Positions 991 to 34,248 are shown, counted from the first letter of the stretch. The stretch is 64,000 nucleotides of DNA from Lytechinus pictus (GCF_037042905.1 NC_087254.1:8680001-8744000); one strand, 5' to 3'. Numbers and translations are program-made. The notes: generated from the letters alone by a model not told the origin.

Positions 991-2004
991 TTATATTTTC
1001 TTACATGACATTTTCATGAAGCAACTACGAAATCCTTTTAAGCAAATGCATCTTGCTTCGGCGTTTGTCAGTATGTATACCAATGGTTGCAAACATGCAC
1101 AGGTTCCAGCAATAACGTCAAGCATGCGCTTTGTAGATTGATCAGTTGGTAGGAAGTAGGTGAAAATATATGGTAGCCACGATATATAAAAGGAACCTGT
1201 GAGGAGAAATACTTTATAGAAACCTTTAAACCTCCCTCGATGTGGCTTATAATTCATTTTTCCGTTCTGCACATCTCGAATTTGAAAGTTATCGGACGCG
1301 TCACGAGCTCGTACACGATCTGCAACTGTGGAAATGCCATTATCCATGTTAACATTATTAACATGGACACGTGGGTCTGCTTCAACCCTAAAAACTCGAC
1401 GTGCAATTACTAAAAGTTTAAAGTATAAGAGTGTCGTTAAAAGCAGAGTCGCCAAAATTGGACAGGTTTTGATTACTGTGTGAACGGTCGATACCCAATG
1501 AACCTCTACATTAGCTTGAACGAGGCAACGTTTCACATAGAGCTCAATGAAGGGTGAATTGGGAATAGGAAGATAAACTCCACATGACAATAAATTTATG
1601 ATGAGAGTTGCGACAAGTGTATTATAGAATCGGGTTCTTGTTACTAATGTAGGATATCGTAAAGGCCTCGTGATCAGTAGATAAAGATTGAGACACGTAC
1701 CACTGCGACACGTCAGTGCAGAGAGTAGGGATACTTGATACACGTATGGGAATGTCATGCTTACGATCATACAAGTTTTCTCCTTTGGGTAAGGTGTAAA
1801 GTACATTATGGCCCATAGGTTCCAGGTGCTCCCTAAAATCATATCTGAAATGGCAAGTACCTTATACAGCACACGCATGTATTCTTGTAGTTCCTTTTGG
1901 TTTCCTATTACATTGAGGACGATCATGTTCAAAATAATACACATTGCAATATTTACGATACTTAGTACGTCAGGTTTCTTTCCAAAATCGTCAGCTTCTT
2001 CCAT
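991..2004 (-). CDS. Intronless class A (rhodopsin-like) GPCR 'A', 337 aa, putative chemosensory/orphan receptor
   Basis: Seven hydrophobic segments; TM2 LAISD, TM3 end LNLYLLITRPLRY (DRY position degenerate), TM6 SWLP, TM7 QPLVY, helix 8 NAEAR. Confidence 0.92.
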   Translation of the reverse strand: MEEADDFGKKPDVLSIVNIAMCIILNMIVLNVIGNQKELQEYMRVLYKVLAISDMILGSTWNLWAIMYFTPYPKEKTCMIVSMTFPYVYQVSLLSALTCRSGTCLNLYLLITRPLRYPTLVTRTRFYNTLVATLIINLLSCGVYLPIPNSPFIELYVKRCLVQANVEVHWVSTVHTVIKTCPILATLLLTTLLYFKLLVIARRVFRVEADPRVHVNNVNMDNGISTVADRVRARDASDNFQIRDVQNGKMNYKPHRGRFKGFYKVFLLTGSFYISWLPYIFTYFLPTDQSTKRMLDVIAGTCACLQPLVYILTNAEARCICLKGFRSCFMKMSCKKI

Positions 2005-2490
2005 TCTGTTTCAGTCCCCTTTTTATAACTCTATCCTCAGAAGTATTTGTGATATCCAGAATTTTCTTGGCTACTATCGAGACATTTGGCACATAAGATA
2101 CATCTCATAAGTCTGCGGCTGTCGGCTCAGTTGAATGTGCCTGGAAACTCTCCTTCACAAATGTGGGGTCGACAGTAGCCTGGACGAGGTTTTTCCTTTA
2201 CATGATGATTCTGAGCGTACCAAGAATTCGCCAATGAAAGATCCTAACACTTCAAGCATGTACTTATCTAGTACCACTTTGAGATAGATAGCATTAGGTC
2301 AAAATTGTTGACTTCTGCATTGTAATATTCGGTAACAACGCACAAATCACTCCAAAAGTATTACTAATCTAACTGAACAATTGTTGGATATACCAGATCT
2401 AGGAAATGATTGACATCTTAATTGAAGTTGCGTTTCGAAAAACAAAACAGCCATCCATCATATTCTGGAATAAGTAGTCTCTCTTAATTG

Positions 2491-2889
2491 CAAGTTCGAA
2501 CGAAGTTGCAAATTCGTGACTTTAAATGTAAACTTGGTCGTAAGACAGCTACAAATATTTGGCCTAAAACATCTTACGTCAACGTAGTTTGAAATCGGGC
2601 ACAAATTTAATTGCCTATCGTAATGAGATACATTCTCACTCTGCAGTAGTTTAGTGTAAATAGTACATGTAAGGGAATAAATGTCAGTGTCAAGTTCGAA
2701 CGAAGTTGCAAATTCGTGACTTTAAATGTAAACTTGGTCGTAAGACAGCTACAAATATTTGGCCTAAAACATCTTACGTCAACGTAGTTTGAAATCGGGC
2801 ACAAATTTAATTGCCTATCGTAATGAGATGCATTCTCACTATGCAATATTTTAGTGTAAATATTATCTGTAAGGGAATAAATGTCAGTG
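2491..2889. repeat. Two near-identical 200-bp tandem copies
   Basis: CAAGTTCGAACGAAGTTGC...ATGTCAGTG starts at 2491 and again at 2691. Confidence 0.9.
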
Positions 2890-3023
2890 CGCGAACACCC
2901 CATCCGACTTCTTCATGGATCATGTTTGGTAAGACGGTCTTTTTTATAAGAGCAAATCAAAACCTCCATTGTGAAGGTACTGATGAAACACAGTCATAAC
3001 TAGAGAATAGAACCAAGTGATCA

Positions 3024-3154
3024 GGGGCCCGTATCACGAAGCTTAGCAATGATAGTAGAACAGTTTTCTACGATTGATTCTATTGACTACAATGTACAAT
3101 CAATCGTAAAAATCAAGCGTACGATTAATCGCTAACCTTTGTGTTACGGGATCC
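3024..3154. mobile_element. Short MITE (PIF/Harbinger-like); related copy at ~51776-51925
   Basis: Imperfect TIRs GGGGCCCGTATCACGAAGCTTAGC / GCTAACCTTTGTGTTACGGGATCC. Confidence 0.55.
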
Positions 3155-4616: not shown

Positions 4617-5648
4617 TTATCTTCTCAAACGTTTAAGGCAATGACGGAATCCTCCCAGGAAAAGACATCTTGCCTCAGCGTTTGTTAATATGTAGATAAC
4701 TGGTTGCAAGCAAGCAAAGCTTCCTGACAAAATGTCAAAGATTAGGATTTTAAAAGGATTCAGTGGTATCACGAAACGAAAGGTATATGGTAGCCATGAA
4801 ACATAAAAAGAACCTGTAAGAAGAATTACAGTTAATGAACCTTTCAACCCTCTTCTTTGCCGACGGACAAGGTTGATGTCGCCATTCTGCACATCTCGAA
4901 TTTGCCGACTTTCCGGTTTGTGACTGCGACCAAGAGGTTCAGAAAAACGGTCTTTATCTTCCATTCTAACATTATTAGCACGGAGACGAAGGTTGTTAGG
5001 GATGACTCCAATCTTACTTATTTTACATGCAATAAGTAGAAGTTTAATATAAAGTATTGTAGTAAATATCATTGTTACAGCTATTGGAAATAGTCTAACG
5101 ATCGTGTGAACAACTGAAGTCCAATCATCAATCTTCATCAAGCTGTCAGTCTCGATGCAACGTTTAACCAAAACTTTTATAAAAGGTGAACCGGGGATAG
5201 GCAGGTGTATTCCAGAGAGAAGTAGAATCGCGAATCCCGTAACACTAAGGGCCAGGTGGAATCGGGTTCTTGTTACAATACCATTGTATCGCAAAGGCCT
5301 TGTGACGAGAAGATAAAGATTAAAACACGTGGCAAAGCGAGAGGCCATTGAACACAGTAAAGATGCCTGATAAACATATGCAAATGACATGCTTATGATG
5401 GTGCAAGCATATTGGCTAGCATAAGCTCTCCAGAAAATGTCCCATAGGTTCCAACTGCTTGCGGCAATCATATCAGAAATAGCAACTATCTGGTAAAGCA
5501 CTCGCATGCAATCCTGAAGCTCTTTTTGGTGCTTTATGATAATAAGGAGCATCATGTTTAAAATAATAGACACAATAATTTTGACAATACTGAAGGCACT
5601 AGGCTTAAAAAGCTCCGTTGTACTTGTAACATTGTCCTGTTCTTCCAT
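4617..5648 (-). CDS. Intronless class A GPCR 'B', 343 aa
   Basis: Paralog of A; N-glycosylation sequon NVT, VAISD, FNLYLLVTRPLRY, SWLP, QPVIY. Confidence 0.92.
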   Translation of the reverse strand: MEEQDNVTSTTELFKPSAFSIVKIIVSIILNMMLLIIIKHQKELQDCMRVLYQIVAISDMIAASSWNLWDIFWRAYASQYACTIISMSFAYVYQASLLCSMASRFATCFNLYLLVTRPLRYNGIVTRTRFHLALSVTGFAILLLSGIHLPIPGSPFIKVLVKRCIETDSLMKIDDWTSVVHTIVRLFPIAVTMIFTTILYIKLLLIACKISKIGVIPNNLRLRANNVRMEDKDRFSEPLGRSHKPESRQIRDVQNGDINLVRRQRRGLKGSLTVILLTGSFYVSWLPYTFRFVIPLNPFKILIFDILSGSFACLQPVIYILTNAEARCLFLGGFRHCLKRLRR

Positions 5649-5804
5649 TTTAGATGCCTGTATTGGTTTCTTGCAGGGGAAAAAAAATCAATTTCAAACG
5701 TCGTGTTTCGATAGAGGCAGATAATAGCTCATGGCTCCAGGTTGACTCGTCTAGTGGATGGGTTTTCTGAATAAGGGGCGCTCGCCATTGCAGTCTTATA
5801 TCTC

Positions 5805-5954
5805 GGTCACATTTGCTCTACGGCGGCCGTACGGCGAGTCGAAAACAACCAATTAAACATTTCTTGTACCCGCTACATATAGGTGGTTTGAATAAAAATG
5901 AATAAAACGGCTGTTTTCGACTACCCGTAGGGCCGCCGTAGAGCAAAGGTGACC
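5805..5954. mobile_element. MITE upstream of GPCR B
   Basis: TIRs GGTCACATTTGCTCTACGGCGGCC / GGCCGCCGTAGAGCAAAGGTGACC; absent from the duplicated copy at ~15670. Confidence 0.75.
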
Positions 5955-6347
5955 AATTTGTTATTGCCAAATGAATGCATATCACGGGGATAAAGTTCCC
6001 TATTGCGTCAGCAGATATGGCATAATTTATCATTATTATACAGAAGAATGATAATCAGTCGTGTGGCTGTCCATTATGAAACTAATGAAAGGCATCAACC
6101 TTAATAGTCGACAAATATAAGCCTTAGGAAATGAAAGACAGTTTGATTAAACTTTTATACTGAGCACTGATCATCCATCAAAATTATATGAAATAAGCGA
6201 AGCATTTTTCTAAGATTTCAAACACCACCACAAACAGTGATTTCAAATTTAATCATACGATTAAGTAAAGTCCACAATTAACACGAGAGCGGTTTAAGTT
6301 CTAAGTTGTGATGCCTAGTCCTTGTCCATGTTGTTTGGCACAAGTTA

Positions 6348-6560
6348 CACTCTAAAAAAAAGTTTACCCAATATTGGGTAAAATGGGAACATGCATGTTG
6401 GTTTGGTAAAAAAGTACCAAATATTTTGTAAGTTTTACGCAATATGGTGTTGAAATTTACCCTTTTGCCCAATATGGGGTTAGAAAAAAATACACAGCAA
6501 ACATGCAAGTTCCTTTTCTACCAAATATTGGGTAAAATTTTACTCAGTGTTTTTAGAGCG
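6348..6560. mobile_element. MITE with CAC termini flanked by TA (CMC/EnSpm-like)
   Basis: TA|CACTCTAAAAA ... TTTTTAGAGCG|TA, with internal ACCCAATAT/ATTGGGT repeats. Confidence 0.6.
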
Positions 6561-7023
6561 TACGATGGCATCATAAAAAACAAAAGCTTAACTGGATCAG
6601 GATCAAGTCCATCAACGATCAAATACATCAATTTCTTATTCTTCCGAAGTGGTGGAAAAGACGGAGAATGATGTACAATAAAACATATATATATTCAAGA
6701 ACTTTTCACCCAGCAAGCAAATCAAAAGAGCATATACAGTATACTAACCATCAGGGAAATTAACCAGTGCTGTCCAAGCTAATTAAAAATGTTTGTCCGG
6801 TCAAAACACCTGGCCGCCACAACCGCGCAAGCCGCCATGCATACCTTAAAGGCCGACCAAAAACCATTTGCTTTTGACCACCTCAGGTCGACCTTGATTG
6901 ACCTTTAGGTCTTTCCAGTTAAAAATATCATGCCTTTCATATCTAAATTTTGGCCGGCTAAACATGATAAAAGGCTGGACCAGAGGGCAAATTGGAATCA
7001 GTGATCTGCAGTTTACACTTTAA

Positions 7024-7420
7024 AGATAAATTTCAGTTGTGGGGACGATCTCAAAATGACTATTTACAGAATTTAATATAATGATCACCAAAGTGTCTGT
7101 TTGTATGAATACAAAATATGTGCCAACGGATTCTGGAAGAAATTGAGTAACTGCTGAGAAATAAGCAAAATAAGCGCGGATTCTGTCACTTCCGTCGGGT
7201 CTTTATTCCAGCAATAATGATACACTGTCCCACGTGTGCCTATCTGTGTTGGCGATCTTCAGTGTGATCGTTTTTTAGCTCAGATATTATGATTTCACAA
7301 AGTTCAGTTTATGTAACTGTATCAGATCTAGATCGTCGATGATATAGTAATACTTATAACCTTGGTTTTACAGACTTTCCCACGAAATCAGTATTTTACT
7401 GCAACTACTGTCATTTAGCT
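7024..7420. mobile_element. Non-autonomous Kolobok-type element with TTAA target duplication
   Basis: TTAA|AGATAAATTTCAG...CTGTCATTTAGCT|TTAA; the paralogous site at ~16460 (CACTTTAAGGTTTG) is empty with a single TTAA. Confidence 0.85.
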
Positions 7421-7803
7421 TTAAGGTTTGTCTCCTTGAACAAAGGATAAGATGACTGTTGGGTTAACAACTTATGGTCGCCACCTGAAGATGGAGATAA
7501 AACTGATATTTCCATAAGAACAAGAAAGTACATACTTAATGTGGAAATCTGGTAGAAACTAGTTTGGAAGAGGGTCAAGATAGAAACATTTGGTTGAATC
7601 GACTAGTCTAAGTAAGATGTTGAAGTATAAAAATGTTACCAATCACTATAACATTACTTCTTCCAAATGAGAAATGTCCACTATTCTCAGGTAGATGGTT
7701 TTATAGCTTTTTCGCAGCCTATTATTTCGCATTCTGGGTTCCGTTTCGGCGTTCATCTTCAAACGGTAATTATGCTTATTCATCCAATGCTCACCTCCGA
7801 AGG

Positions 7804-8815
7804 TTATTCTTTTAGGTACTTCCTGAAAGCATTCAAGTACAATGTTCTAGCCTCAACATTATTAAGCAGGTAGAGAATAGGTTGCGTCCAGGTGCTGCTT
7901 ATTGCAACTCTGCTAACGATTTCCAAAGATGAAGAAAACATCGATATTACAAAGCTTAATACGAGAAATGGTGTCCATGCGACACAGAAAGACAATGTCA
8001 GAAGCGAAATCGTGAGGAACTCTTTGTATTGCCTTTGGTATTGGCGATTACGGTTTCCGTCAAGATCTACTGCATCCGCATCAGAAGTGATACGTCTCCA
8101 CGACCGAAGCAATAAATTGCAGATCCCTGTCTTGCCACGGTTAGGGTTTCCAGGAATGGCTACAGTATTCCTTATCTCACGGATGATGAACATAAATCTG
8201 GTGAAGATTGTCGTCGTGAACACAACAGTTGCACAAATTGGTAAGGTAGAGTACAATGTATGTGCAATATATCCAACGAGGTGCAGTTTTGACACTTTGA
8301 GATAGACATCGTTCTGTTAAGAGTTGAATGAAGGGCGACTGTGGAATTGGTAGGTATACCCCATGTACCAATATAACAAAAACATATGCTGTCGAAAGAG
8401 CAAGGTAAAACCTTGTTCTGGTTAGGATCGTGAAATATCGCAGTGGCTTTGCGATGAGAAGATAGCTGGTCAAACTGATTCCGCAAAGACATATCATCAC
8501 ATAATTCATAGAAACCTGATATAGATATGCGAACGTCATGCTCAAAATTGTGCATGTTTCCCTAATTTTAAGAGAAAACCAGAGAATATTCCAACCATTC
8601 CAGGTAATGCCCAGTGTCAGTGACATATTCGATAGTGTCAAAACCTGGTAAAGAAAACGAGTGTAGTCTTGATGTTTCTGTTGATGATGCATTACAAATA
8701 GTTGTATTGCGTTGAACATAATTGATAGAAATATTGCAATGACGCAGTAAACATCTATAGGGCCCTTCATTGTAGAGCTCGTATCTGCTGCGCCAGAAAA
8801 AGCTGTAGTATTCAT
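7804..8815 (-). pseudogene. GPCR 'C' pseudogene (frameshifted copy of 16818-17825)
   Basis: 2-bp deletion at ~8268 (TGCAAT-ATATCC vs TGCAATGGATATCC) splits it into ORFs 8177-8815 and 7804-8295. Confidence 0.88.
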
Positions 8816-9589
8816 GTCTCCAAACTACTCGGTATATGCTTTCGGGAATGAATTTGATGATTTTAGAAAAGACTGAGCAATTAGTACGTTTTATGTCCAT
8901 TCTTCATAGGCAACTCGTGTTTGCTTTATAATGAACTTGAAGATAACACAAATGATGGTGTTAATACAACGGACATGTACTTCACTCTCAACGTGTCATG
9001 TTAGGAAGCAGCAACATGGTACACACACTCATGTTAGGACTGGCTGTCTATTACATTTTTAATTATGCTTCCTATTATCATCAAGCACCATCAAAATCTG
9101 TCATGTTTACAAACCCATTTGATTCCTGAACATTATCTACATGCTCATTTATTACCAGTATCCCTTCTTAGAGTAGAAAGCATAGGAATTAGTAATTTGA
9201 TCAAAGGGACTATAATCTAGGCATATGTGACAATTTTCCTTAATTTTATGGGGGAACCATTCGAATTTTCGTTTGTGGAAGAATCATATTCTAATTCATA
9301 CTTTTTCATACATTGTCAATGTCATTCGTTCCTTTACAAATACATAAATCGGAATATTGCATTTGGTTAATCACATTTAGAGACTGGATATATTTAGATT
9401 GGTCATCAAGTTTTATAAGTATTCTTTATATTTGAATGAATATTGAACTGTTCTTTGATATGACAGGTACCCATGCACCCCATTTCATTCAATATCTATA
9501 TACTACTGTATCATTATCTGATACAGTATCAACACAAACAAATATGCATTTTAAAACTATAATTGAACATGTAACCAATTCTATGCCGA

Positions 9590-9800
9590 GTTTCTAGGAC
9601 AATGAACCCCCTGACAATGAACCCCCGGACAACTACCCCCTGATAATTACCCCCGAGGACAATTACTCCCCCCCCCGGACAACTACCCCCGAGGACAATT
9701 ATCCCTCCCCCCGTAAAACTACCTCCAGACAACTACCCCCCGAGGTCATTTACCTCAAAAAAACAATTACCCCCCGAAAAATCACACCCCCCCCCCCTTC
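9590..9800. repeat. C-rich GGACAA(C/T)TACCCC minisatellite-like repeat; other copies at 18565-18765 and, inverted, 19720-20040
   Basis: Many ~17-22 bp units with C4+ runs. Confidence 0.8.
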
Positions 9801-10627
9801 TCTCCGGCATCGATGTAGGAATCAAGGGAGACCCATTGTAAATCTTGGCCGTCGGCACAGGTTTTCGAAATATTATCTACTTTATCTTAATAACTTTCTC
9901 TTTCTCTTTCCCTTTCTCTTTTATATTGCTCTTTCTCCCCTCTCTCTCTCGCACTTTCTTTTTTCTTCCTTTTTCCCCCTTTTTCTTCCCCTTTTTTTTG
10001 GGCGGCGCCTTCCGCGTCATGAAAATGAGAGTATATGCATCAGACATTTTTATGTAAACTGAACAATTGAACAATCATGAAAGGACACAATTACACATAA
10101 TAATCACAAATGCTGAATATCTCTGATTCCAACAGATCTGATTTTTATCTATTTTGGGTTGAATTTCAGGAAAAATATAAGGCAAAGATAAAACGTTAAG
10201 AAGACACCTTCATAGGTAGAAGTATTGAAAGTCGATAACGCATCCATGAACACTAACACTGACGAGTATAAAATTGTTATTTTAAAACAATTCAACAAAC
10301 AAGAAGAAGCTAAGAATTATGAAACAATTGGTGCACATTCCAGATTAAGCTATGGCTCTATAACTTAATTAAGTTTAATAACTTTGAAGCAAAGATTAGG
10401 TTTGCCCGTATATTGACATGATAGGTACATTCACTACCTTTCCTTTTTCTCGTATATATTTCACCGTAATAAACTTTATATTTTGCTCAAACGTGACACA
10501 ACATACTATGGTGAAGAAAAAAAACAAAAAGGATTTACCGCAAAACAGTTTCCTAATTTGTATGTATTCAGCTTGGACTGGACAGACGTTTAAAAAGATT
10601 CATGAGCGCATATTCAAAAGATCAATT

Positions 10628-11048
10628 TCATCTCGGACGAATAGCCACATTGATTTTCAGGCACTTCTTAAAAACATTCAAGCACAATCTTCTCGCCTCA
10701 ACATTTGTCAGCAGGTAGAGTATGGGCTGCGACCAGGTGTTGCTTACCGATACCTTAACTAGTATATTTAAGGAATATGGGGGCATTGATATTAAGAAGC
10801 TTAAAAGAAAGGGCATCCAGGCAATACAGAACGAAGCAGTTAGAAGGAAAGTCATGAAGAATCCTTTATACCGCCTGTGATGTGGACGGTCACGGTGTGT
10901 GTTTAGATCTCCAACGAAATCCAACCGGGAAGCAAAAGGTGCTTCATCACTATGGCAAAAGCAACTGCAGAACCCTCTTTTGCCTCGTATACGGTTTCCG
11001 GGAATGGCTACTGTATTCCTCTTCTGATGGACAATATACATTAACCTG
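10628..11048 (-). pseudogene. GPCR 'D' 3' fragment (end of TM5 to C-terminus only)
   Basis: Nearly identical to 20961-21381 (RLMYIVHQKRNTVAIPGN...WSQPILY); homology ends abruptly at 11048. Confidence 0.88.
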
Positions 11049-13809: not shown

Positions 13810-13978
13810 CTGCCAAAGCAGACCATCTTTTTTTAAAACAGAGTGCAACGTCATCATTGTCATATCTTCGAGTGTCGGGTGACCAGTTTAGTGCAATTGC
13901 ATTTCTACCAGATATTTTTGGAGGCACTTCTCGAAGACGTTCAAGATCAACCCTCTTGCTTCGACATTATGAAATTTA
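13810..13978 (-). repeat. Local duplicate of the last ~19 codons and 3' flank of GPCR E (also at ~27170-27298)
   Basis: ATTTTTGGAGGCACTTCTCGAAGACGTTCAAGATCAACCCTCTTGCTTCG matches 14181-14230. Confidence 0.75.
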
Positions 13979-14178
13979 TTCACCTTGAGATTGGAGTCCG
14001 CACTTTTGAAAGAGATTTACTCGAAACAAACTTTTTTTTAGTTGCGCGCTCATCCGTCACTTAGTGAAAACAGGAACGATATTATATCAACTGCCAAATT
14101 AAAGCAGACCACCTATTTTCAAAAGGGAATGAAGTGTCATAGTTTTCATCGTGCACAGGTGGAGTCCTAAACCTCCGA

Positions 14179-15208: not shown

Positions 15209-15317
15209 TTCTTCATGCCTGTATATGGATGAGATTCTTTGGTTCTGATAGGGTGAGCTTACAAAATCAATCAGAATACCAAAGACACTTTACTTGTAGA
15301 GTGATGTAAAAAAAAAA

Positions 15318-22131: not shown

Positions 22132-22584
22132 TCTTTCAAACTACTCAGTTTATACTGAATGACGGTAAAAGAGCTGTGAAGGTTAGGCCATTATAATCCT
22201 TCCCAAGAACAGTCACCTGTGCGATGTTGCAAAGTCAATCACATGCTTAAAGGCACGATAAGAAATCTTGATGAGCATTTTAAGATATACTTTTACACAA
22301 ATCCAGTGACACTCGCCCGATGCAAAATCAGTAAAATTTTCGCCATGAAACTTGAATTTTACTGTCAAAAACTGATGGCATGACTGAAGCAGAGTGATCG
22401 CTTTCTCGATTAGTGACAAGAACTTCAGAAAAGGTCTATCCCTTTGTTACTTATATCATAATTGTTTATCCATCGTTTAGGTGAAATCAATCTCCCAAAA
22501 TCCAATGACTAATTGTCCAAAAATATATCAAGATTCACTAGATTCATGAAAGTGTGGCGTATCCTGAGAGAGGTACGGAATACC

Positions 22585-23350
22585 TATGTTCACATAGTTG
22601 ACTATGTGTTAATTGTGCGTTAACCATGTGTCCACAGTGTGGGACTTCAGATCACATAGTGAACCACATAATTACCCACATAGATAACAAACACAGTGTT
22701 GCCACTGTGTGCTCACATAGTTGACTATGTGCAAATTGTTTGTTAACCATGTGGTCACACTGTTGTCACAGTTTGGGACTCCTGATCACATAGTAACCAC
22801 ATAATTCTCCACATAGTTTGCACTCAGAACACAGAGTGGCACACATATACCACAGTGTGGTATTGTTGAACTATGTGTAAATCATGTGTAAATAGTGTTG
22901 CCAAAGTGTGTTCACAGAGTTGATTGTTGTAATTGTGTGTAAATTATGTGGTCACAGTTTCGTCACAATGTTGGACTCCTGGTCACATAGTGAACCACAT
23001 AATTACCCACATAGTTAGGTATCAAACACAGTGTTGCCACAGTGTGTTCACATAGTTGACTATGTGCAAATTGTTTGTTAACCATGTGGTCACACTGTTG
23101 TCGAAGTGTGGGACTCCTGATCACATAGTAACCACATAATTCCCTACATAATTTGCACTCAGAACACAGAGTGGCACACATATACCACAGTGTGGTATGT
23201 ATTGAACTGTGTAAATCTCATGTTCATAGTGTTGTCACAGTCTGAAATTTCATTTTATGTGATTTTCCACATAATTTCCACATAGTTGGTATATTGAACA
23301 CAGTATGGTATATTTTTAACAATGTGTACAACCTGTGTTTACTTATTTTC
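22585..23350. repeat. CACATAG/CACAGTG-rich tandem repeat, ~335-bp period
   Basis: TTTGCACTCAGAACACAGAGTGGCACACATATACCACAGTGTGG at ~22817 and ~23152. Confidence 0.75.
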
Positions 23351-25443
23351 ACACTGTGAGAGTTCAGATCATTCATTTACCACATATCATCCCCAAAGAC
23401 TTGGCATACTGAGCACAAACTGATTGGACCTAAGAAGTTCCAGTCCAGTAAAGAAAGAAAAAGAAGAGATACAAAAAGGAACAAGCGAAGACAAAAACAT
23501 ACAAGGGAAAAACAAACATTAACAAAGTGAAAATAAAGTGTTTGCCTTTCTAGAAAAATGATAGAAAAGGGTAAAGGACTAGCATGTGTGGAGGGTCACA
23601 GAAAATCGACAGGTGAAATTAGTAAGAATAAGAGACGAAGGGCAAACACAGACATTATGATCATGTTACAGTTACTTAGTTGTTAATAGTTGTTGAAATT
23701 TATTTATCAATCTACGAGAAATAAATTACATCGACACTTTAATATGAAGTGATTATTTATTGATTAATCAACGAGTAAATGTTCAGTTCTATCGGAGTGA
23801 CCAGACATTTATTTACCGAACAATCACATTTCTATAATGTTCCTCAGACGTTTTCTTGTATTATTTTGTGATGACTATTATTAATATTTTTGTTGTTTTG
23901 GTTACATCATTATCATTATTATCATGTTTTATTATAATATGTTCACTATGATCAGGTATACCATTTATTTATTTTGAACAAAACTCCTTTATATCGGAGG
24001 CATTCACAAAACATGGTGTGTTCATAGTAAAAAAAAAAATCTACATGCACTAAAAAAAAAACATAAAAATATTAATTCACCTCAAAACTACTGTGTTTGT
24101 TAAACATGATAAAGTAATATTCATTAACATCAACTTAATGTGTATTTGGCAACTCAGTATTCAGGTGACTATAAGGAGGAATCTGCAAATTCTTTTTAGA
24201 CTAGCTGGATATGCACAGAGCTAATGTGATTACCTTATTTTCTGCTTTTAGCAGCAAGTGTATTATTTTCTGTCAAATTTCTCAAACTTTCTGAAAAAGC
24301 AAGATTTTGTTCTTCATTGATATTTTGTGACTTCATTTAAAACCCTCTAAACGCTTTCTAATCTTAAGAATGAATACCGTACGCCCTTTTCCGGGAACAA
24401 AAATACGCAATCCACTGATCAAGTTCCCGGAGAAAGGACGCTAACGCAAATGCGCAATCCAGTTCCAGGAAAAACGCTGCTAGCGCGAATCGGTCTATGC
24501 GCGTAAGCACGTTAAACGATGATTTTTTTTCTGGGAACGAAATGCGCGATCCAGTTCATAAAGAAAACACGCATCTATGTGCGTAAAGCACGTTGGAATG
24601 TTTTTGCTTATTACGTCATAATGATGTCACATTTAGGTTTGAGAATGGTACCAGAAGAAAGTTCATGACATGCTTTTTCCATTTCAGCAATTAAAAGACA
24701 CAAGTTTTTTAAAGAAAATGTCGATAAGTCCCTTCTTGCCAACAAAATTGTGATAAATTCAATAAGAAATTTATTTATGAATATCAATTGATAATACAGC
24801 GAATCTCTTTATGAGGCCATTGGGGATAAAAACAATTCGCTCGTTACATTGGATATTTTATCCTATAAGTACTCCTTATACCGAGTTTCCACTGTGAATA
24901 ATTTCATTAAAGAGAATAAATACGCACAACAACAAAATGTAGCTATACCCCTTTTTTCCTATACTCCCATTAATTTTTCGACGAAATGAGTTCTAGCATT
25001 TTTACATTCATTAGGTAACCTCTGTCTGAAAATCAGATTGATCCGTCAAGCAAGTGAGCATACATAAAAGGCAAAAAAAATCCACTTTTCAAAATTCACA
25101 GGAATCACAAGTTATGCCTAAATAATGGGAAATAATGGTAGTGTTTTGCTGAATTTATAAAATGTGCTCACTGAACCATAACATGGTTACAACCTCTCAT
25201 ATCCGTACATGTAAAGAATACATTTTGCTGAAAAAGTATTTATACCAAATCTATATTTTGTAGACCTACTTATCATTCAGATATTGGCTTTTATTGCACA
25301 ACTAGTTTTTGATAATACAGAGACTACCTACCAGTAGGTGTGCTAGCCCATAGAAATCTCAAAACAGCACCAGAGCCTTATCTGAATAACTTATCTTTTA
25401 CTTTATTTTTCAAATTAATTTATTCATCTATTTTCTAGTTCTA

Positions 25444-26822
25444 CAGCGCGTATAAAAAAACGGGACAGATGTGAAAAGTCTATAAAATGTTTGTTTCAAA
25501 TTATGATGTCTATATTTTGGTGTTAATAGGTGCTCTGAAGTCTTATTTTTCAAATGCCATTAGAAAATTTTAGTTTCATTCATGCTTGAGCGAACACGGA
25601 ATGTTTTTGTCTGGGGTTAAAAAGGAAGCTTGCGCCAAAATGGCATAAAATTATAAATATGATGATCGGACTTCTTGCTAATCAGCAGACTTCCTCCTAA
25701 CCTTTATATTATCTTTGCCATAATTTTCAAATTATGCGGTCAAAATTATTTTTCAAATCTATTTATTTGCTTCAATTGTTCTGTTATTTCTTTTTAATAT
25801 GTTCTCGTTTAGCTTTGAATATTCCTTCTTCAAGCAAAAACAATTTTTTTTTTCAACCGAAGTATGGGAGAGCGTGATTTTTTTTCTTCAAATCCTTTCA
25901 TTGTGTGCTACAAACATGAAAAAGGTTATGGTGCCTTTTGAACAGTGCCATACAGATGTGCGGGGCTCGGGGGTGCCCCCCCCCCCTCAATAAAAAAAAA
26001 TCATGACCAAGAAAAAGTGGAAAGGAAATAAAAGGAAAGATAGAAAGTAAAATATGATATAATTTTCTGAATATTATGTAAAAATCTATCGCAAAATTTG
26101 ATATTGTGATAAAAAAGTCGGGATATTTGTGTGCTCGCTTCGCTCGCTCACAGCTTTTTAATACATTTTACCCGATCTGCCATATCTAGCTCCTTCAAAA
26201 TTGACTCAATACACCATTGCCATCGAAAGACATGAATCCCTTCCTGTTTGTCCTGTCAAGCATATAATTAAACTTGGTCAAGGAATAAATAACCCCTTGA
26301 AAAATTAATTTATGTCTTTTAAAGGTACCATAACATAATTTGTTTCACATAATAGAATTTGAATAATTAAAAGTTTTCCCAATTAAAAATGCAAATCTTC
26401 TTGCTGGGGTCGACAAAAAGTCTTCTTTTCTTACTTATTAAGGAAAATTCAAAGGTAAAAGAAGTTAAAATAAAAAAAAAACTAAATAATTCAAGTAAAT
26501 AAATAAATTTGTAAATAAAACTTGACAGCATAATTCGAAAATTATAGCACAGATAGTGAAAAGGTCATGAGGAAGTCTGCTGATTAGCAAGAAGTCTGAT
26601 CATCATATTTTACTCATATTCTGCCATTCTGGCGCAAGCCTCTTTTTGAACCCCCGACAAGAACGTCCCGTGTTCGCTCAAGCATGATCAAAATTTATTT
26701 TTTTTAATTGCATTTCAAAGACAAGATTTCAGAGCATCTATTAACATCAAAATATAGATATCATAAGTTGAAACAATTTTTTATAGACTTTTCAAAACTG
26801 TCCCGTTTTTTTATACGCACTG
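25444..26822. mobile_element. Tc1/mariner-type non-autonomous element with long TIRs
   Basis: TA|CAGCGCGTATAAAAAAACGGGACAG ... CTGTCCCGTTTTTTTATACGCACTG|TA; the paralogous site at ~13445 is empty. Confidence 0.85.
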
Positions 26823-27550
26823 TATATCAGATACTTTTTTAACCCTACATGCTGTTATTTCATTTCAATAATCCTTCAATAAATACATACATATAGAGAA
26901 TAGAATTGACGGAATAGTGGGAAACCCATTAAAAAACACGAGCTTGCAGGAAAAAACCCCAATCGATATGTATGAAATGTACCTAACAAGCAAATATAAC
27001 ATTGATTGAAGTTGTGTAATTATTGTCTCATTTCATTTAGTATATCTTAATAGAGAATCAGATGAAAGAACAGAGCTATTTCTATAAGGACAGGCGATAT
27101 GTACAGTACAAGGTTCACGGTGTTTTCACTTTTTTGTGAAAAAGAATCTGAAAATTGATCTGTTTTCAAACAAGAGTGTAATATCATTTTCATATCTTCG
27201 AGTGTCGGGTGACCGGCTTAGTGTAATTGCATTTCTACCAGATTTTTTTGGAGGCACTTCTCGAAGACGTTCAAGATCAACCCTCTTGCTTCGACATTAT
27301 GAAATTTGTTCACCTTGAGACTGGAGTCTGAACTTTTGGAAGAGATTTACTCGAAACTAACTTTTTTTGAAGTTACGCACTCATCCGCCACTTGGTGAAA
27401 ACAGGAATGATATATCAACTGCCAAATTAAAGCAGACCACCTATTTTCAAAAGGGAATGCAGTGTCATAGTGTTCATCGTGTTCGGGTGACCAGTTTAGT
27501 GTCCATGCATGCACAGGCGAAGTCCTAAATCTCCGACAATATTCACCAGA

Positions 27551-28546
27551 TTATTTTTGGAGGCACTTCTTGAAGACGTTCAATATCGACCCTCTTGCTT
27601 CGGCATTTATCATCAGGTAAAACAAGGGTTGCAGCCAGATGTTGCTCACCGATAGCTTGCGGATGATAGTCAAAGAAGACGGGGGCATCGACATAAAGAA
27701 GCTGAGAACGAATGGTATCCATGCCATACAGAAAGATAACGTCAAAAGTAGAATAACTAGGAACCCTTTATACCGCCTACGATGTGGACGGTCGCGGTTG
27801 ACGTTAAGATCTTCTCCGAAAGTCTCTTGAGAGGGAATCTGTGAATCATGGGAACCAGAGCAACTGCCAAACCTGTTGTTGCCACGAATGTGGTTTCCAG
27901 GCATGGCCACATTATTCCTTATCTGACGGACGATAAACATTATCTTTATGAAGATTGTCGTCGTGAACACAACAGTTGCGCAAATTGGTAAGGTACTGTA
28001 CAAAGTGTGTGCAATGGATGTCCAATAAAGTGCAGTTTTGACACTTTGAGATAGGCAACGTTCTGTTAAGAGTTCAATGAAGGGCGACTGTGGAATCGGT
28101 AGATATACCCCATATAACGACACGACAATGGTGTATGCTGCTGAAAGGACAATATAAAATCTTTTTCTGGTTACGATCGTAAAATATCGCAGCGGCCTTG
28201 CGATCAGAAGGTAGATGTTCATACTAATTCCACATAAACACATCATCACAGATACCAACGAAAAATAATATGCAAATGCAAACGTCATGCTTAAAATGTT
28301 ACAAGTTTCTTTGCTTGCCAGAGCAAGCCAAAGAAGAAGCCAACAGTTCCAGCTTATTCCAAGTGATATATTCGATACTGCTAGAATCTGGTAAAGAATA
28401 CGTGTGTATTCCTGAAGTTCCTGTTGTCGATTCAATATAAATAATTGTATTATGTTGAATATAATTGATAGAAAGACTGCAAAGATGTAGAAACTGTCAA
28501 TTGAAGTATTCGTCTGAGAAGTCATGTTTAACTCTGTACCATTCAT
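27551..28546 (-). CDS. Intronless class A GPCR 'E-prime', 331 aa
   Basis: Full 7TM ORF; MNGT sequon, LCGISMNIYLLIARPLRY, AWIP, QPLFY. Confidence 0.92.
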   Translation of the reverse strand: MNGTELNMTSQTNTSIDSFYIFAVFLSIIFNIIQLFILNRQQELQEYTRILYQILAVSNISLGISWNCWLLLWLALASKETCNILSMTFAFAYYFSLVSVMMCLCGISMNIYLLIARPLRYFTIVTRKRFYIVLSAAYTIVVSLYGVYLPIPQSPFIELLTERCLSQSVKTALYWTSIAHTLYSTLPICATVVFTTTIFIKIMFIVRQIRNNVAMPGNHIRGNNRFGSCSGSHDSQIPSQETFGEDLNVNRDRPHRRRYKGFLVILLLTLSFCMAWIPFVLSFFMSMPPSSLTIIRKLSVSNIWLQPLFYLMINAEARGSILNVFKKCLQK

Positions 28547-30147
28547 TTTCTTTAAGCCTATAAATGGATGTGATTCCGTGATTCTGACAGGGTGAGCTTA
28601 CAAAATGAATCAAAGCAGAATACCAGATACACTCTCTGTCAACCTGTGTTTACTTGTAGAGTGATGTCCGAAAACGTTTGGTCAAAGCAAGTCATTTGTT
28701 TTCGATATACAACGCACTTCATTTTTCATAAAGGCCTATCACATTTCTCATTAGAAGCGTTCCAAGTGCATGTCAGAAAGCACTTTCATACCGTTTCTCA
28801 AGGTTCAAAATATTCATGACAATTCTGCGAATCCTGGATGAGTATGATTGGTTTTGACATGAATAATGTAATGTAAAGGTAATAACACACAACAAAGGAA
28901 ATATCCTTGATTTTTTAATAGCCTTGAGGTTCGGGTTTGAATTTATATCATAATTTGAAATCCACGATTTTTCTGAAGGGGGTGAATTTTCCCCTAAAAG
29001 TTGTCGCCCCCCCCCCCCCCCCCTCTTCGAAAGGGGTCATCAATAAAAAAGTAGTTTGGGTCCTTCTTCTTTGCCTTTTAAATTTTGGGGGGTTGTTGTT
29101 GAAATTTTGCAGGATGCGCCCACACCTTTTACCACCCCCCCCCCCCGGATTCTCACCTGCTGTAGCTTCGATGAAAAAATAACACCACTGTATATCCAAG
29201 AAATTTGATCGAAGAGATACTACGTCAGGCAACACGCTACGTTGACTCTCTTCAAACAATAAAACATGTAAAATGGACCATCATAAGGGCATGAAATTCC
29301 TGATAGTAATTTTGCCATCGAATTGGAATTTCCATGGAACCCTTTAGTTGTTGGGCATTTCTACCACTTTCGACGAGTGGGACACGCCTACCGCCTCAGA
29401 GTCCTGGCATATTTTGACTTTGTAAATATACCAATACCTTGATTTATCACTACAATTTAGGACTGTGCTGAATAAATAAACTTGATTCTAAATCTCATTT
29501 TAATGGATATAGATATAAACAATATTCATCCTAGAAGAATATGTGGAAGAAAAGGCCCCGTCTGCACGAAACTTTTATAGGCATATGCGGATTCCAAAGT
29601 TGTAATGGATTTAATAGTAAGAGAGAGTGTGCGCGTACGTATGCGTGTGTGCTTGATCGAAAGGGAGAAAAGGAAATAGGTACGTTGCTATTAATTACAT
29701 TAAAGCTACCCTATCCCTATCTTTCGTATCCATCTTTTAGTCATTGATCACACCTCCTGTGTTTGCATTTCGCCGTCTTATCGAAATAAAAGCATGTAGG
29801 CCTATTATCCACGCTGTGCCAGTAAATCTTAATTAACATTCATATTAAAGCGCCCCCTCAAAATTCTGATATCAGATTGTATAACTGTATTGATTGGATT
29901 TCCGACTAAATTCAACTTTGCATTATTTCATGTGTACTCCGGTTGCTTCCTCATGAGCTTACTCGGCCTTCTCTTCATCATGCCAGTTCCCATATCTCTG
30001 ATATTCACACCCTTTCTCATCTTTAAGAATCGCTTGATTCGTTTTTTCCTCAATAATCCAATGTTTTCTATGTTTCATCATTTTATGTGTTTTACGCATG
30101 CATTTTTAAATATCTATGTTATATTCATTTTTGTATGGTTTTCCGGG

Positions 30148-31407: not shown

Positions 31408-31914
31408 TTTTAAGCTTCCATAGCAACCCTTGTGCGGGTTATTTAACCTTTGTTGTCTCCCCGAGACATGCTTTTTTTTATACTTGTCTAAATAAAATCA
31501 ATTCAATTCAACTGTGAATGCAATCGCGTTGGTAAATCTGAGATGTGTTGGAGTTGTACTTCTTCAGATGTGTTAAAAACATTGAATCAACTCACTAAAT
31601 TATGAGATTATCCACCGGGTAACATTTAAAGACATTGATCAACATTACAACCATGCCAAGGGTCTTGTTTAAAAAAAAAGACTGTGAATTTCAATGTGTT
31701 GTATTTACATGATATACTGGTTCATATGGATGGAAAAAACACTCATATGTAAATAAAAACAAAAAAAATCCGGCACTCAGTGACAGAGTTTCTCTCTGTC
31801 ACTCTATCAGTGACAGAGTTTCTCTGCTCGGGACTCTAATCGCAGCACATTAAGTACATGTATTTGAAATAAATGGGGACGCTTTATTTTTCACTTCTAT
31901 GAAGCACTAAATGT

Positions 31915-32270
31915 GGAAGCGCCGTGGTATAGCGGTTCTGACTCTTGCCTTGTAATCAGAGGATCGTGTGTTCGATTCCCACCATGGCCTAGTGTCCTTT
32001 GGCAAGGCGTCAATCCACAATTTGCCACTCTCCATCCAGGTGTTAAATGGGTACCCGGTAGGATGCGAAAGCCTATGTAGTATGCCTAGCAATTGAGTCT
32101 TGGAACTCTTGTTGGAATGCTACCCAGGGAGTGGAGAAGTGCATACATTGTACGCGGGCATGCAAGGATCTGATGACCGGGGTAATAATATATCTGTAAA
32201 GCGCTTAGAGACGTCGTTCCGATGTATTAAGCGCTATATAATAAATGCGGAATATTATTATTATTATTAT
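31915..32270 (+). mobile_element. tRNA-derived SINE
   Basis: A box TGGTATAGCGG, B box GTTCGATTCC (31970), central CCAGGTGTTAAATGGGTACC, LINE-like 3' hairpin AAGCGCTT...AAGCGCTA and a (TAT)n tail. Confidence 0.85.
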
Positions 32271-33234
32271 TGAATGATGATTTGAGGGGTAGTTTCTTTT
32301 CAGGGCTTCGTGTTTACAGCATACCACAGACACAGGTTACACATGAAACCTTACAGCTTAGTTTTTATTTCATTCAAATCAATGTTAACCAAAGCAATTT
32401 AGCTATTATAGCTTTAAAGATACAAAATAACCACTACACGGATTTTTTCCAACAGAATACAGTCGATTGAAACGCTATAAGCAGCATGGAATATAAAGAA
32501 AATTAAACTTATTTAATTTCTCAGGGTCCTCATTTGTGTACTCAAAATTGTTTTTCAAATCAGATATGTCACGCCCCCAAAAAAAATCGTTATCATAATT
32601 GAATAAAAGCTTGCCAGGTTAGAACGGGATTTGATACTCCCATTTTGCCACTCTTTCTTTTCATTTTTAGTTTTATTTTGAAGATTTATAGTCTCAACCC
32701 GGAGAAAAGCTGGATAAATATTTGGCGCATACTTGTAATGGTTAAAACACGTGTGAGGATCTGCCAGAATACATATAATACAGGGCCTAACTGAATTTTC
32801 ATCGATCTTACTCACGTGGCACGTAGAAAATGGCAAATAGAAGTAAATCTAATACGATTAAAGTATGCAGGTCACGTGGAATATCCATTTATCGCAGCAT
32901 TAGGGGGTCCTTTGCAGAAATAGATGCAATCAATCGCATCTTTCAGATCATACTCGACTTCAACCAATCCAAATTGCGTACTCGGGACTTGCGCTTGATT
33001 TTTGTGCGTTTAAACGCAGCGCCTGCTGCAACGGGCCTCAAGAAACAGAAGTGCTTATAGTTTGTAATCAATAACGGGTCAGCACTGACCAATTCATTTA
33101 TTGCAAATACTCTACGAGTCACGATGGATAAATCCCGTTAATTCCGGCTAAGCATTTATTGCATTTACCACTTTATACATCGTCCTTGCATTTATCGACT
33201 CTTCCAAATTTCGGGAGAGCATTCAGATACTCGG

Positions 33235-34248
33235 ATGAAGATGAGTAGCTTTGAGGAAATGGCGTTAAACCAGACACAAAGGAGATCAGCAGTTCAATTC
33301 ACATTTGATATGGGTTTATATCTGTTCATCATATTGTGTTCAACGATTTTGAATATTATCATCATTGTCATCATTAATCAACAAACACAAATGCAGGATG
33401 TTATGAAAGTACTTTATCGAGTTCTGGCTGTTTTGGATCTCACCTTTGCCGTACTTTGGAATTTGTGGGGGATATTCTGGTTTCCTTTTACCGATTTGTA
33501 CTCCTGTAATCTCATCACAAGCCTTTTTGTGTTTCCTACCTATGTCATACTCAACGCCATCATGGCATGTTTATCAGGTATCAGCTTTACTCTGTATCTC
33601 CTCGTAAGCCGTCCCTTGCATTTTTACAGGATCGTCACTCCGACTAGATTCCGGATAGCTCTTGGGATTGTATCTCTCCTGATTCTTTTGGCATCAGGGA
33701 CATCACTGCCTGTCAACACTTCCCCGTTTCATCGGGCTCGCGTACAACAATGTATGTTGAACACGTCGTTAAACATCAATAACATCAACTGGATAGAAAT
33801 TGTCAGTGCTGTCTTATTCCTCGCTCCTGTTGTAGTGACATTTGTCATTTTGACCGTGATCTCGATCAAACTCATTGGAATTGTACGTCAGCAATCGAGA
33901 GCTATTGCCACAGACACTACAGAGGTGCAGGTCCGCAAGACAACCCTTACCGATCGCCAACAGCATCGGCTAGTACGGAATGGATACAACCGCCGGCAGA
34001 TAAAGGGCAAGCCCGCAATTTGTCAACGTTACAAAGGAATCATTACCATTCTCACTATCTCATGTGCATTCATTCTTGGATGGGCACCGTTCTGTATCAT
34101 GAGGACCGTACCAGGTCTTTTTTCTTCGAATGCTCTCGTCATCGTAGATAAGTTTGCTGTGTCCACTACATGGATACAACCGATCCTGTATCTAATGACT
34201 AATGGAGAGGCGAGGAAGATATTTCTTTCGAAAATAGGTGTACGTTGA
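33235..34248 (+). CDS. Divergent intronless class A GPCR 'F', 337 aa, same family
   Basis: LAVLD, LSGISFTLYLLVSRPLHF, GWAP, WIQPILYLMTNGEAR. Confidence 0.92.
   Translation: MKMSSFEEMALNQTQRRSAVQFTFDMGLYLFIILCSTILNIIIIVIINQQTQMQDVMKVLYRVLAVLDLTFAVLWNLWGIFWFPFTDLYSCNLITSLFVFPTYVILNAIMACLSGISFTLYLLVSRPLHFYRIVTPTRFRIALGIVSLLILLASGTSLPVNTSPFHRARVQQCMLNTSLNINNINWIEIVSAVLFLAPVVVTFVILTVISIKLIGIVRQQSRAIATDTTEVQVRKTTLTDRQQHRLVRNGYNRRQIKGKPAICQRYKGIITILTISCAFILGWAPFCIMRTVPGLFSSNALVIVDKFAVSTTWIQPILYLMTNGEARKIFLSKIGVR

What the first reader, a model, noticed from the sequence alone, without database searches (positions are those of the whole stretch)
991..34248. Expanding family of atypical class A GPCRs lacking the DRY arginine and NPxxY asparagine
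Seen: every copy that retains TM3 has N-L/S/I-Y, T-S-Y or T-L-Y at the DRY position while keeping the flanking LxGIS and xPLRY context. All copies with TM7 have QPxxY. The C/D/E subgroup also has Asn at 2.50 (LxxSN) instead of Asp. Established: R3.50, N7.49 and D2.50 are among the most conserved activation and sodium-pocket residues of rhodopsin-type receptors. Inference: five intact, divergent ORFs suggest a lineage-specific, probably chemosensory family that signals by a non-canonical mechanism or acts as G-protein-independent or scavenger receptors.
Basis: partly seen in the sequence, partly recalled or inferred. Interest (0 to 1): 0.75.

Follow-up and report, generated by a model that had tools for sequence, protein, structure and literature searches.

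The report
Sea-urchin receptor family lacking DRY arginine
This stretch of the painted sea urchin genome holds nine tandem copies (five intact) of a roughly 50-gene, sea-urchin-only family of rhodopsin-type receptors. The family has replaced the arginine and asparagine that almost all such receptors use to signal, yet natural selection still keeps the genes intact; how they signal is unknown.

Summary
The window carries nine intronless 7tm_1 copies, five intact and four broken. Every copy that keeps TM3 has N/T-x-Y where other receptors have D-R-Y, and every copy with TM7 has QPxxY. Two independent alignments, to the apelin receptor and to GPR52/GPR21, put these motifs on 3.49-3.51 and 7.49-7.53.

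The genome is Lytechinus pictus. Genome-wide I found about 49 intact paralogues in about ten clusters. Among the 44 analysed, none has Arg at 3.50 (34 Leu, 4 Met, 3 Lys, 2 Ile, 1 Ser) and none has Asn at 7.49. Asp2.50 is variable. N1.50, P5.50, F6.44, W6.48, P6.50, P7.50 and Y7.53 are kept.

dN/dS is 0.3-0.6, and the cytoplasmic face is the most conserved part. On a tree the family is nested among echinoid clades with K3.50 or DRY, which suggests a stepwise change from Arg to Lys to Leu.

My best reading is a lineage-specific, birth-and-death, chemoreceptor-like family with rewired activation switches. Coupling is untested. The scavenger idea is weakened because there is no C-terminal tail. 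No RNA reads covered the two copies tested. Other family members are auto-annotated in RefSeq under borrowed names. I found no paper describing the motif loss, and the key 2006 paper is not held in the library.

The parts
991..2004 (-). Intact receptor gene A (337 aa): D2.50, R3.43, N-L-Y at 3.49-3.51, QPLVY in TM7
   Evidence: ORF; 7tm_1 39.2 bits; motifs; no RNA reads in 3 runs
4617..5648 (-). Intact receptor gene B (343 aa): D2.50, R3.43, N-L-Y, QPVIY
   Evidence: no RNA reads
7807..8815 (-). Pseudogene C' (94% identical to C): a 2-bp deletion near 8268/8269 shifts the frame, with further +4/-4 indels; T-S-Y, QPILY, N2.50
10628..11083 (-). Fragment F': only the 3' third of a gene (TM6-TM7-helix 8, SQPILY). 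The sequence upstream is unrelated.
14179..15208 (-). Pseudogene D' (95% identical to D): a 34-bp insertion at 14433-14466, and TAG at 14347-14349 when read in D's frame; N-I-Y, N2.50
16818..17825 (-). Intact receptor gene C (335 aa): N2.50, N-S-Y, QPILY; folded as a 7TM bundle with helix 8
   Evidence: AlphaFold2 pLDDT 81.9, pTM 0.78; Foldseek matches to class A GPCRs
20984..22131 (-). Probable pseudogene F: about 150 extra bases (21681-21858) split the gene in the ECL1/upper-TM3 region (codons ~94-100), and the six-frame match has in-frame stops. The downstream part keeps N-I-Y and SQPILY.
27551..28546 (-). Intact receptor gene D (331 aa): N2.50, N-I-Y, QPLFY
   Evidence: dN/dS against C = 0.31
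33235..34248 (+). Intact receptor gene E (337 aa), the most divergent copy and on the opposite strand: D2.50, T-L-Y, QPILY
   Evidence: it sits in a different subclade on the tree
5453..28633 (.). Segmental duplication: block 5453-15289 (C', F', D', all broken) matches block 15315-28633 (C, F, D) at 82-94% nucleotide identity
   Evidence: self-blastn

Best explanation
The window is part of a tandem array on Lytechinus pictus chromosome-scale contig C10. The array continues upstream with three more intact genes. It belongs to an echinoid-restricted, intronless class A GPCR family of about 50 intact genes plus at least ten pseudogenes or fragments. The family evolves by birth and death, as animal chemoreceptor repertoires do.

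In this family the polar activation network of rhodopsin-type receptors has been rewritten and then frozen:
- D3.49 became N.
- R3.50 became L (rarely M, I, S or K).
- N7.49 became Q.
- S3.39 became hydrophobic.
- W4.50 became L.
- D2.50 is free to vary.
- E6.30 is replaced, mostly by R.

The mechanical transmission switch is kept: P5.50, F6.44, W6.48, P6.50, P7.50 and Y7.53.

The ligand-facing extracellular half diverges fastest. The cytoplasmic face is the most conserved part (ICL1, the TM3 end, ICL2 'RPLRYxTIVTRxRF', the TM6 start 'KG', the TM7 end and helix 8 'TNxEAR').

I infer ligand-diverse sensory-type receptors that all address one conserved intracellular partner. That partner is most likely still a heterotrimeric G protein, engaged without the canonical Arg3.50 contact, as in TAS2R bitter receptors.

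Shown here: gene structure, motif states, selective constraint, phylogenetic nesting and fold. Inferred: the chemosensory role and the intracellular partner.
For: - Family size and clusters. About 49 full-length, stop-free matches score at least 337 bits, followed by a gap down to 226 bits or less.
- Motif census in 44 intact genes.
- Generic numbering.
- Pairwise dN/dS is 0.2-0.8 for most pairs, typically 0.3-0.5 once dS exceeds 0.15.
- dN is higher in the extracellular half than in the cytoplasmic half in 16 of 17 independent pairs.
- Column entropy is 0.8-1.3 bits for ICL2 and the cytoplasmic TM3, TM6 and TM7 ends, against 2.0-2.3 bits for TM4 and the extracellular halves of TM5-7.
- Tree. 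The core clade has SH-aLRT 98 and sits inside a 71-row clade (SH-aLRT 99). The other branches of that clade carry NKY, CKL or DKY, or DRY with RPxxY. The next sister clades carry NRY with HCxxY and xRY.
- Species and taxon range come from RefSeq names: L. pictus, L. variegatus, Diadema, S. purpuratus.
- The fold is a 7TM bundle with a long TM5, a TM6 starting near 6.32, and helix 8.
- There is no C-tail: a median of 16 residues follows NxEAR.
- TAS2Rs lack DRY and NPxxY, yet the same paper models TAS2R4 in complex with its G protein (PMC10392674).
Against: - No transcript evidence. Zero reads fell on genes A and B in three RNA-seq runs, each about 25% sampled and of unknown tissue.
- The five window proteins are not in the public protein collection in exact form.
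- Leu at 3.50 is one of the structural features given for the inability of C5aR2 to activate G proteins (bioRxiv 10.1101/2025.11.01.685996). Receptors lacking the Arg3.50 side chain are reported to fail to activate G proteins (as cited in PMC2700072).
- No ligand, tissue or partner is known for any member.
Confidence: 0.55

Rival explanations
1. These are G-protein-incompetent 7TM receptors. They might be arrestin-biased, decoy or scavenger receptors, or co-receptors in the manner of C5aR2 and the atypical chemokine receptors. On this reading, losing R3.50 is the mechanism that uncouples them.
For: L3.50 in 34 of 44 genes and K3.50 in the outer clades mirror C5aR2 (D-L-C) and, from my own recollection, ACKR2 (D-K-Y). 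N7.49, S3.39 and often D2.50 are also gone.
Against: There is no C-terminal tail to carry phosphorylation clusters. ICL3 has a median of only 4 Ser/Thr. The model does not show the shortened TM5 and TM6 reported for C5aR2 and ACKR1. Y7.53 is kept, whereas C5aR2 has F7.53. A repertoire of about 50 diversifying paralogues is unlike any known decoy receptor. The conserved cytoplasmic motifs are shared with the DRY-retaining sister clade.
Confidence: 0.25
2. These are constitutively active or self-activated orphan receptors related to GPR52/GPR21. A conserved ECL2 element would act as a built-in ligand, and D3.49N would remove the inactive-state lock.
For: The best solved-structure sequence matches are GPR52 and GPR21, at 3e-16 and 2e-14. 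RefSeq auto-names relatives 'GPR52-like' and 'GPR21'. The first half of ECL2 is unusually conserved (P154, S158, P159 and C168 at 93-100%). The statement that D3.49N-type changes raise basal activity comes from my general knowledge and was not tested here.
Against: The margin over aminergic receptors is small (62 against 55 bits). Extracellular TM halves diverge quickly, which argues for external ligands. I could not inspect where ECL2 sits in the model, because no coordinates are returned.
Confidence: 0.1
3. The family is decaying. The motif losses would then reflect relaxed constraint in genes on their way to becoming pseudogenes.
For: Four of the nine copies in the window are broken. No RNA was detected for two copies. 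Some very young pairs have dN/dS of 0.8-1.2.
Against: About 49 ORFs of about 330 codons remain intact. dN/dS is 0.3-0.5 in all pairs with dS above 0.15. The replacement residues themselves are nearly fixed (N3.49 in 43 of 44, Q/H7.49 in 42 of 44, P7.50 and W6.48 in 44 of 44) across paralogues only 30-45% identical. The family is shared by L. pictus and L. variegatus.
Confidence: 0.05

Closest known systems
Sea-urchin rapidly expanded GPCR lineages ('surreal-GPCRs', Raible et al. 2006, Dev Biol 300:461), as cited in PMC5442662 and PMC7042368
   Same: Echinoid-specific, intronless rhodopsin-type receptors in tandem clusters with independent expansions. They are presumed chemosensory and reported in tube feet and pedicellariae.
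   Different: I could not map this family to any surreal group (A-F), because the 2006 paper is not held and no S. purpuratus member of the core clade was named in my results. None of the accessible echinoderm papers mentions loss of R3.50 or N7.49. The holothurian OR-like sets are described as keeping the R of DRY and the N of NPxxY (PMC7042368).
GPR52 / GPR21 (orphan class A receptors)
   Same: They are the best sequence matches among solved structures. Both they and this family have a short N-terminus.
   Different: GPR52 and GPR21 keep D2.50, DRY and NPxxY. The similarity is weak (62 bits), so orthology cannot be claimed.
C5aR2 (C5L2) and atypical chemokine receptors
   Same: They are natural class A receptors with a non-Arg residue at 3.50. 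C5aR2 has Leu (D-L-C).
   Different: They are single genes with long phosphorylatable tails. C5aR2 has shortened TM5 and TM6 and F7.53, and keeps N7.49. The family here has about 50 diversifying paralogues, no tail, Y7.53 kept and Q7.49.
TAS2R bitter taste receptors (and, from my own knowledge, nematode chemoreceptor families)
   Same: They are chemosensory 7TM repertoires in tandem arrays that lack DRY, NPxxY and the sodium-site Asp, yet signal through G proteins (PMC10392674).
   Different: They are a different lineage with no detectable specific homology. TAS2Rs have H7.49-S7.50, whereas this family keeps P7.50, Y7.53 and CWxP-type W6.48/P6.50.

Membership tests
Rhodopsin-type (class A) GPCR, Pfam PF00001 7tm_1 | Scores above the 7tm_1 gathering threshold | tested here: met
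   37.2-50.1 bits against a cut-off of 30.5 for all five intact ORFs
Rhodopsin-type (class A) GPCR, Pfam PF00001 7tm_1 | Seven-helix bundle plus helix 8 | tested here: met
   AlphaFold2 pLDDT 81.9, seven long helices plus H320-332. At least 500 Foldseek matches to class A structures at probability 1.0.
Rhodopsin-type (class A) GPCR, Pfam PF00001 7tm_1 | Arg3.50 of the D/E-R-Y motif | tested here: not met
   0 of 44 genes have Arg (L34, M4, K3, I2, S1). Position fixed by alignment to the apelin receptor and GPR52.
Rhodopsin-type (class A) GPCR, Pfam PF00001 7tm_1 | Asn7.49 of NPxxY | tested here: not met
   Q38, H4, C1, V1 of 44. P7.50 is present in 44 of 44 and Y7.53 in 37 of 44.
Rhodopsin-type (class A) GPCR, Pfam PF00001 7tm_1 | N1.50, P5.50, F6.44, W6.48, P6.50 and the TM3-ECL2 cysteine pair | tested here: met
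   N 43/43, P 41/44, F 42/44, W 44/44, P 41/44, C86 43/44, C168 44/44. In the ungapped GPR52 alignment the TM3 Cys lies four residues N-terminal of 3.25.
Rhodopsin-type (class A) GPCR, Pfam PF00001 7tm_1 | Sodium pocket Asp2.50 and Ser3.39 | tested here: not met
   2.50 is D24, N7, T7, C3, Y2, E1. 3.39 is mainly V, I, M or A (37 of 44).
Echinoid surreal-GPCR expansions (Raible 2006) | Intronless, tandemly clustered, echinoid-specific expansion of rhodopsin-type receptors | tested here: met
   Single-ORF matches in clusters on C1, C2, C4, C5, C10, C14 and C16. Named relatives come only from echinoids.
Echinoid surreal-GPCR expansions (Raible 2006) | Assignment to one of the published groups A-F | not testable with these tools
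   The paper and its sequences are not held. The supplements of two citing papers contain no matching sequences.
Echinoid surreal-GPCR expansions (Raible 2006) | Expression in adult sensory appendages | tested here: inconclusive
   Zero reads on genes A and B in three RNA-seq runs of unknown tissue
Atypical / decoy 7TM receptors (C5aR2, ACKRs) | Phosphorylatable C-terminal tail for arrestin and internalisation | tested here: not met
   A median of 16 residues after the helix-8 NxEAR motif, so the protein ends with helix 8
Atypical / decoy 7TM receptors (C5aR2, ACKRs) | Failure to activate G proteins | not testable with these tools
   Needs cell-based assays

The most novel reading that the evidence does not exclude
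An entire, selectively maintained repertoire of about 50 class A receptors signals without Arg3.50, Asn7.49 and the sodium pocket. It would do so either through a G-protein contact mode not yet seen in class A, or through a non-G-protein partner. The echinoid sister clades (DRY, then NKY, then NLY) would preserve the evolutionary intermediates of that rewiring as a natural mutational series.
Probability: 0.3. Interest if true: 0.7.

Novelty: new variant of a known kind. Interest (0 to 1): 0.45.

Why it matters
Arg3.50 is the residue that touches the G protein in essentially every solved class A complex. Here a family of about 50 paralogues has fixed Leu at that position while staying under purifying selection. 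Living relatives carry Lys or Arg at the same site. Together they form a ready-made natural series for asking which parts of the class A activation machinery are dispensable. The family also adds a defined, countable set of genes to the poorly characterised chemosensory repertoire of sea urchins, in a species (L. pictus) that is now a genetic model.

Tried and rejected
- The search for homologous proteins, with both a single protein and the profile, returned only three hits each. The word filter misses this family. The exhaustive HMMER search was needed.
- I looked for RNA evidence. Only three raw RNA-seq runs of the species label were offered, and none covered genes A or B. Their reads fell only on intergenic repeats. 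Run X1, whose type (RNA or DNA) is only a guess, had a single 153-nt contig inside gene B at depth 2.3, which I do not count as expression.
- Logan contigs carrying relatives (SRR28370582 and SRR28370584) have no poly(A) tail. I could not tell whether they are RNA or DNA, or which species they come from.
- Raible et al. 2006 is not held. Motif strings were absent from the supplements of PMC7042368 and PMC5442662. Text searches for DRY-motif loss in sea-urchin GPCRs found nothing relevant.
- I considered whether Y5.58 is also lost. The conserved TM5 Tyr lies 12 residues after P5.50 rather than 8, and HMMER opens a 3-residue gap there against GPR52. Without model coordinates this stays undecided.
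- I did not run complex prediction. Its reference partners are limited to bacteria, archaea and phages, so no G protein could be supplied.
- I considered that copy F (20984-22131) might have gained an intron. I rejected this as less likely than an internal insertion or duplication, because its two pieces overlap in query residues 79-117 and the six-frame match contains stops.
Full report
**What is in the window**

Between 991 and 34248 there are nine copies of one intronless gene family. Five are intact ORFs of 331-343 codons:
- A, 991-2004(-)
- B, 4617-5648(-)
- C, 16818-17825(-)
- D, 27551-28546(-)
- E, 33235-34248(+)

Four are broken:
- C' (7807-8815) has a 2-bp deletion near 8268.
- F' (10628-11083) keeps only the 3' third of the gene.
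- D' (14179-15208) has a 34-bp insertion at 14433-14466 and a downstream TAG.
- F (20984-22131) carries about 150 extra bases and in-frame stops in the ECL1/upper-TM3 region (codons ~94-100).

A self-comparison shows that 5453-15289 and 15315-28633 are two copies of a 10-kb block, 82-94% identical. The older-looking layout is C-F-D. In the duplicate, C'-F'-D', all three genes are dead. This is birth-and-death turnover, not simple expansion.

All five intact ORFs pass the Pfam 7tm_1 gathering score. In alignment A1 the residues preceding the conserved (T/A/S)(R/K)PL(R/H)(Y/F) stretch are as follows:

| Copy | TM3 motif |
|---|---|
| A | NLY |
| B | NLY |
| C' | TSY |
| D' | NIY |
| C | NSY |
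| F | NIY |
| D | NIY |
| E | TLY |

All eight copies with TM7 read QPxxY. Asn replaces Asp2.50 in C, C', D and D'.

The generic numbering rests on two independent alignments:
- phmmer of copy E against the apelin receptor pairs 'GISFTLYLLVSRP' with 'GLSFDRYLAIVRP', and 'LAVLDLT' with 'LAVADLT'.
- The family profile against GPR52 and GPR21 pairs 'islnlYLLvtrPLrY' with 'ISVDRYLAITKPLSY', and 'vqPivyL' with 'CNPVIYS'.

An AlphaFold2 model of copy C (pLDDT 81.9, pTM 0.78) is a seven-helix bundle with helix 8. It matches class A structures throughout.

**Whose genome, and how big the family is**

One family member elsewhere in the genome, L041 (G000:C1:24080257-24081240), is the RefSeq protein XP_063959982.1, named 'G-protein coupled receptor 52-like [Lytechinus pictus]'. 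It lies on a contig of 44,300,000 bases, which is exactly the length of contig C1 of this assembly. The window is therefore L. pictus.

Six-frame searches of the whole genome were run with copy C and with a 27-sequence family profile. They find about 49 full-length, stop-free matches (at least 337 bits) and at least ten broken ones. A clear score gap follows, down to 226 bits or less. The matches sit in clusters on C1, C2, C4, C5, C10, C14 and C16. The array in this window continues upstream with three more intact genes (L011, L010, L007).

**Census of the switches**

In 44 intact paralogues that are 30-60% identical to copy C:

| Position | State in the family |
|---|---|
| N1.50 | 43 of 43 |
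| 2.50 | D24, N7, T7, C3, Y2, E1 |
| 3.39 | mainly hydrophobic (V, I, M or A in 37 of 44) |
| 3.40 | M in 40 |
| 3.49 | N in 43, T in 1 |
| 3.50 | L34, M4, K3, I2, S1 (never R) |
| 3.51 | Y in 40 |
| 4.50 | mostly L (no W) |
| P5.50 | 41 |
| 6.30 | R in 27 (no acid) |
| K6.32 | 40 |
| F6.44 | 42 |
| W6.48 | 44 |
| P6.50 | 41 |
| 7.39 | D in 40 |
| 7.49 | Q38, H4, C1, V1 (never N) |
| P7.50 | 44 |
| Y7.53 | 37 |

The polar network (ionic lock, sodium pocket, N7.49) has been replaced. The mechanical core (P5.50-x3.40-F6.44, the W6.48/P6.50 motif, and P7.50 with Y7.53) is kept. The replacement residues are as conserved as canonical residues are elsewhere.

**Selection**

Nei-Gojobori dN/dS is 0.29-0.62 for every pair with dS above 0.15 except one (L043/L048, 0.77). 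C against D gives 0.31. A few very young pairs reach 0.8-1.2.

I split the protein by the model's helices:
- Column entropy is lowest for ICL2 (0.77 bits), ICL1, and the cytoplasmic ends of TM3, TM6 and TM7 (1.2-1.3 bits).
- It is highest for TM4, ECL2 and the extracellular halves of TM5-7 (2.0-2.3 bits).
- dN is higher in the extracellular half than in the cytoplasmic half in 16 of 17 phylogenetically independent pairs.

This is the signature of a repertoire with diversifying ligand pockets and a shared intracellular partner.

**Where the family came from**

An exhaustive HMMER search of 1.84 billion representative proteins gave 39 hits at E of 1e-30 or better. Hits with source names are all echinoid:
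- L. variegatus and L. pictus for the core clade.
- Diadema antillarum and D. setosum, and S. purpuratus, for the outer clades.

RefSeq gives them borrowed names such as 'alpha-1B adrenergic receptor-like', 'GPR52-like' and '5-HT receptor 2-like'.

A maximum-likelihood tree of 97 sequences shows the following nesting:
- The core clade (57 rows, SH-aLRT 98) sits inside a 71-row clade (SH-aLRT 99).
- The other branches of that 71-row clade carry N-K-Y with QPxxY/H, C-K-L, D-K-Y, or D-R-Y with RPxxY.
- The next echinoid sister clades carry N-R-Y with HCxxY, and x-R-Y with NxxxY.
- Ordinary DRY/NPxxY receptors root the tree.

N7.49 was therefore lost before R3.50. Position 3.50 appears to have passed from Arg through Lys to Leu. 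At least four state changes are needed on the tree. Inside the core clade there is an NMY/NKY subclade, consistent with single-base steps between Leu, Met and Lys.

**How it probably works**

Shown: these are real, constrained, lineage-specific class A receptors with a rewritten activation network.

Inferred: they are chemoreceptor-like. Four features support this: tandem intronless genes, birth-and-death turnover, a short glycosylated N-terminus, and a variable pocket.

Coupling is open.
- For continued G-protein coupling:
  - The cytoplasmic motifs are shared with the DRY-retaining sister clade.
  - TM5 is long, and TM6 starts near 6.32 in the model.
  - TAS2Rs lack DRY, NPxxY and D2.50, and the same paper models TAS2R4 in complex with its G protein (PMC10392674).
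- Against it:
  - Leu3.50 is one of the structural features given for the G-protein incompetence of C5aR2 (bioRxiv 10.1101/2025.11.01.685996).
  - The proteins stop at the end of helix 8 (a median of 16 residues after NxEAR).
  - ICL3 has few Ser/Thr.

**Expression and prior description**

Three raw RNA-seq runs with the species label, each about 25% read, gave no reads on genes A or B. Only intergenic repeats were covered. The tissue is unknown, so this is inconclusive.

The five window proteins are absent, in exact form, from the 15-billion-protein collection, although other family members are annotated.

The umbrella phenomenon, the sea-urchin 'surreal-GPCRs', was described in 2006. I know it here only through citing papers (PMC5442662, PMC7042368), because the original is not held. 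None of the accessible papers notes a family without R3.50 and N7.49.

**Verdict**

This is a new variant within a known kind (echinoid GPCR expansions). It is of moderate interest, mainly as a natural series for dissecting class A activation.

Noticed in passing
window 1705-1707 and 5339-5341 region (TM3 of genes A and B): Genes A and B carry Arg at 3.43, where the family consensus is Leu (3 of 44 genes have Arg). Their closest paralogues L007, L010 and L011 have Q, L and L. An Arg has thus appeared two helical turns above the lost Arg3.50.
   Followed up: partly
family-wide; window genes A (D at 'RMLDVIAG'), B and E: Asp at 7.39, a pocket-lining position, is present in 40 of 44 paralogues. 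It is lost in the C/D subgroup (S/R), which also has Asn2.50. It could point to cationic ligands.
   Followed up: no
window 30173-31382: An array of imperfect tandem repeats (73-86% identity between offsets of about 50-630 bases) lies between genes D and E.
   Followed up: no
window 3070-3240, 3570-4240 and 5743-5900: These intergenic stretches are covered by many partly matching RNA-seq reads and by high-depth contigs. About 96% of the laid reads run on into unlike sequence. They are dispersed repeats transcribed elsewhere, not local transcripts.
   Followed up: partly
G000:C14:9963881-9978182 (loci L017, L019, L022, L030): This dense cluster of the same family includes three identical-scoring copies spaced 1,506 bp apart. 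Each has one in-frame TGA, so a pseudogene has recently been amplified in tandem.
   Followed up: no
window 35164-35437 vs 35652-35925: A 274-bp inverted repeat at 99.6% identity flanks about 215 bp. It may be a young foldback or MITE-like element.
   Followed up: no
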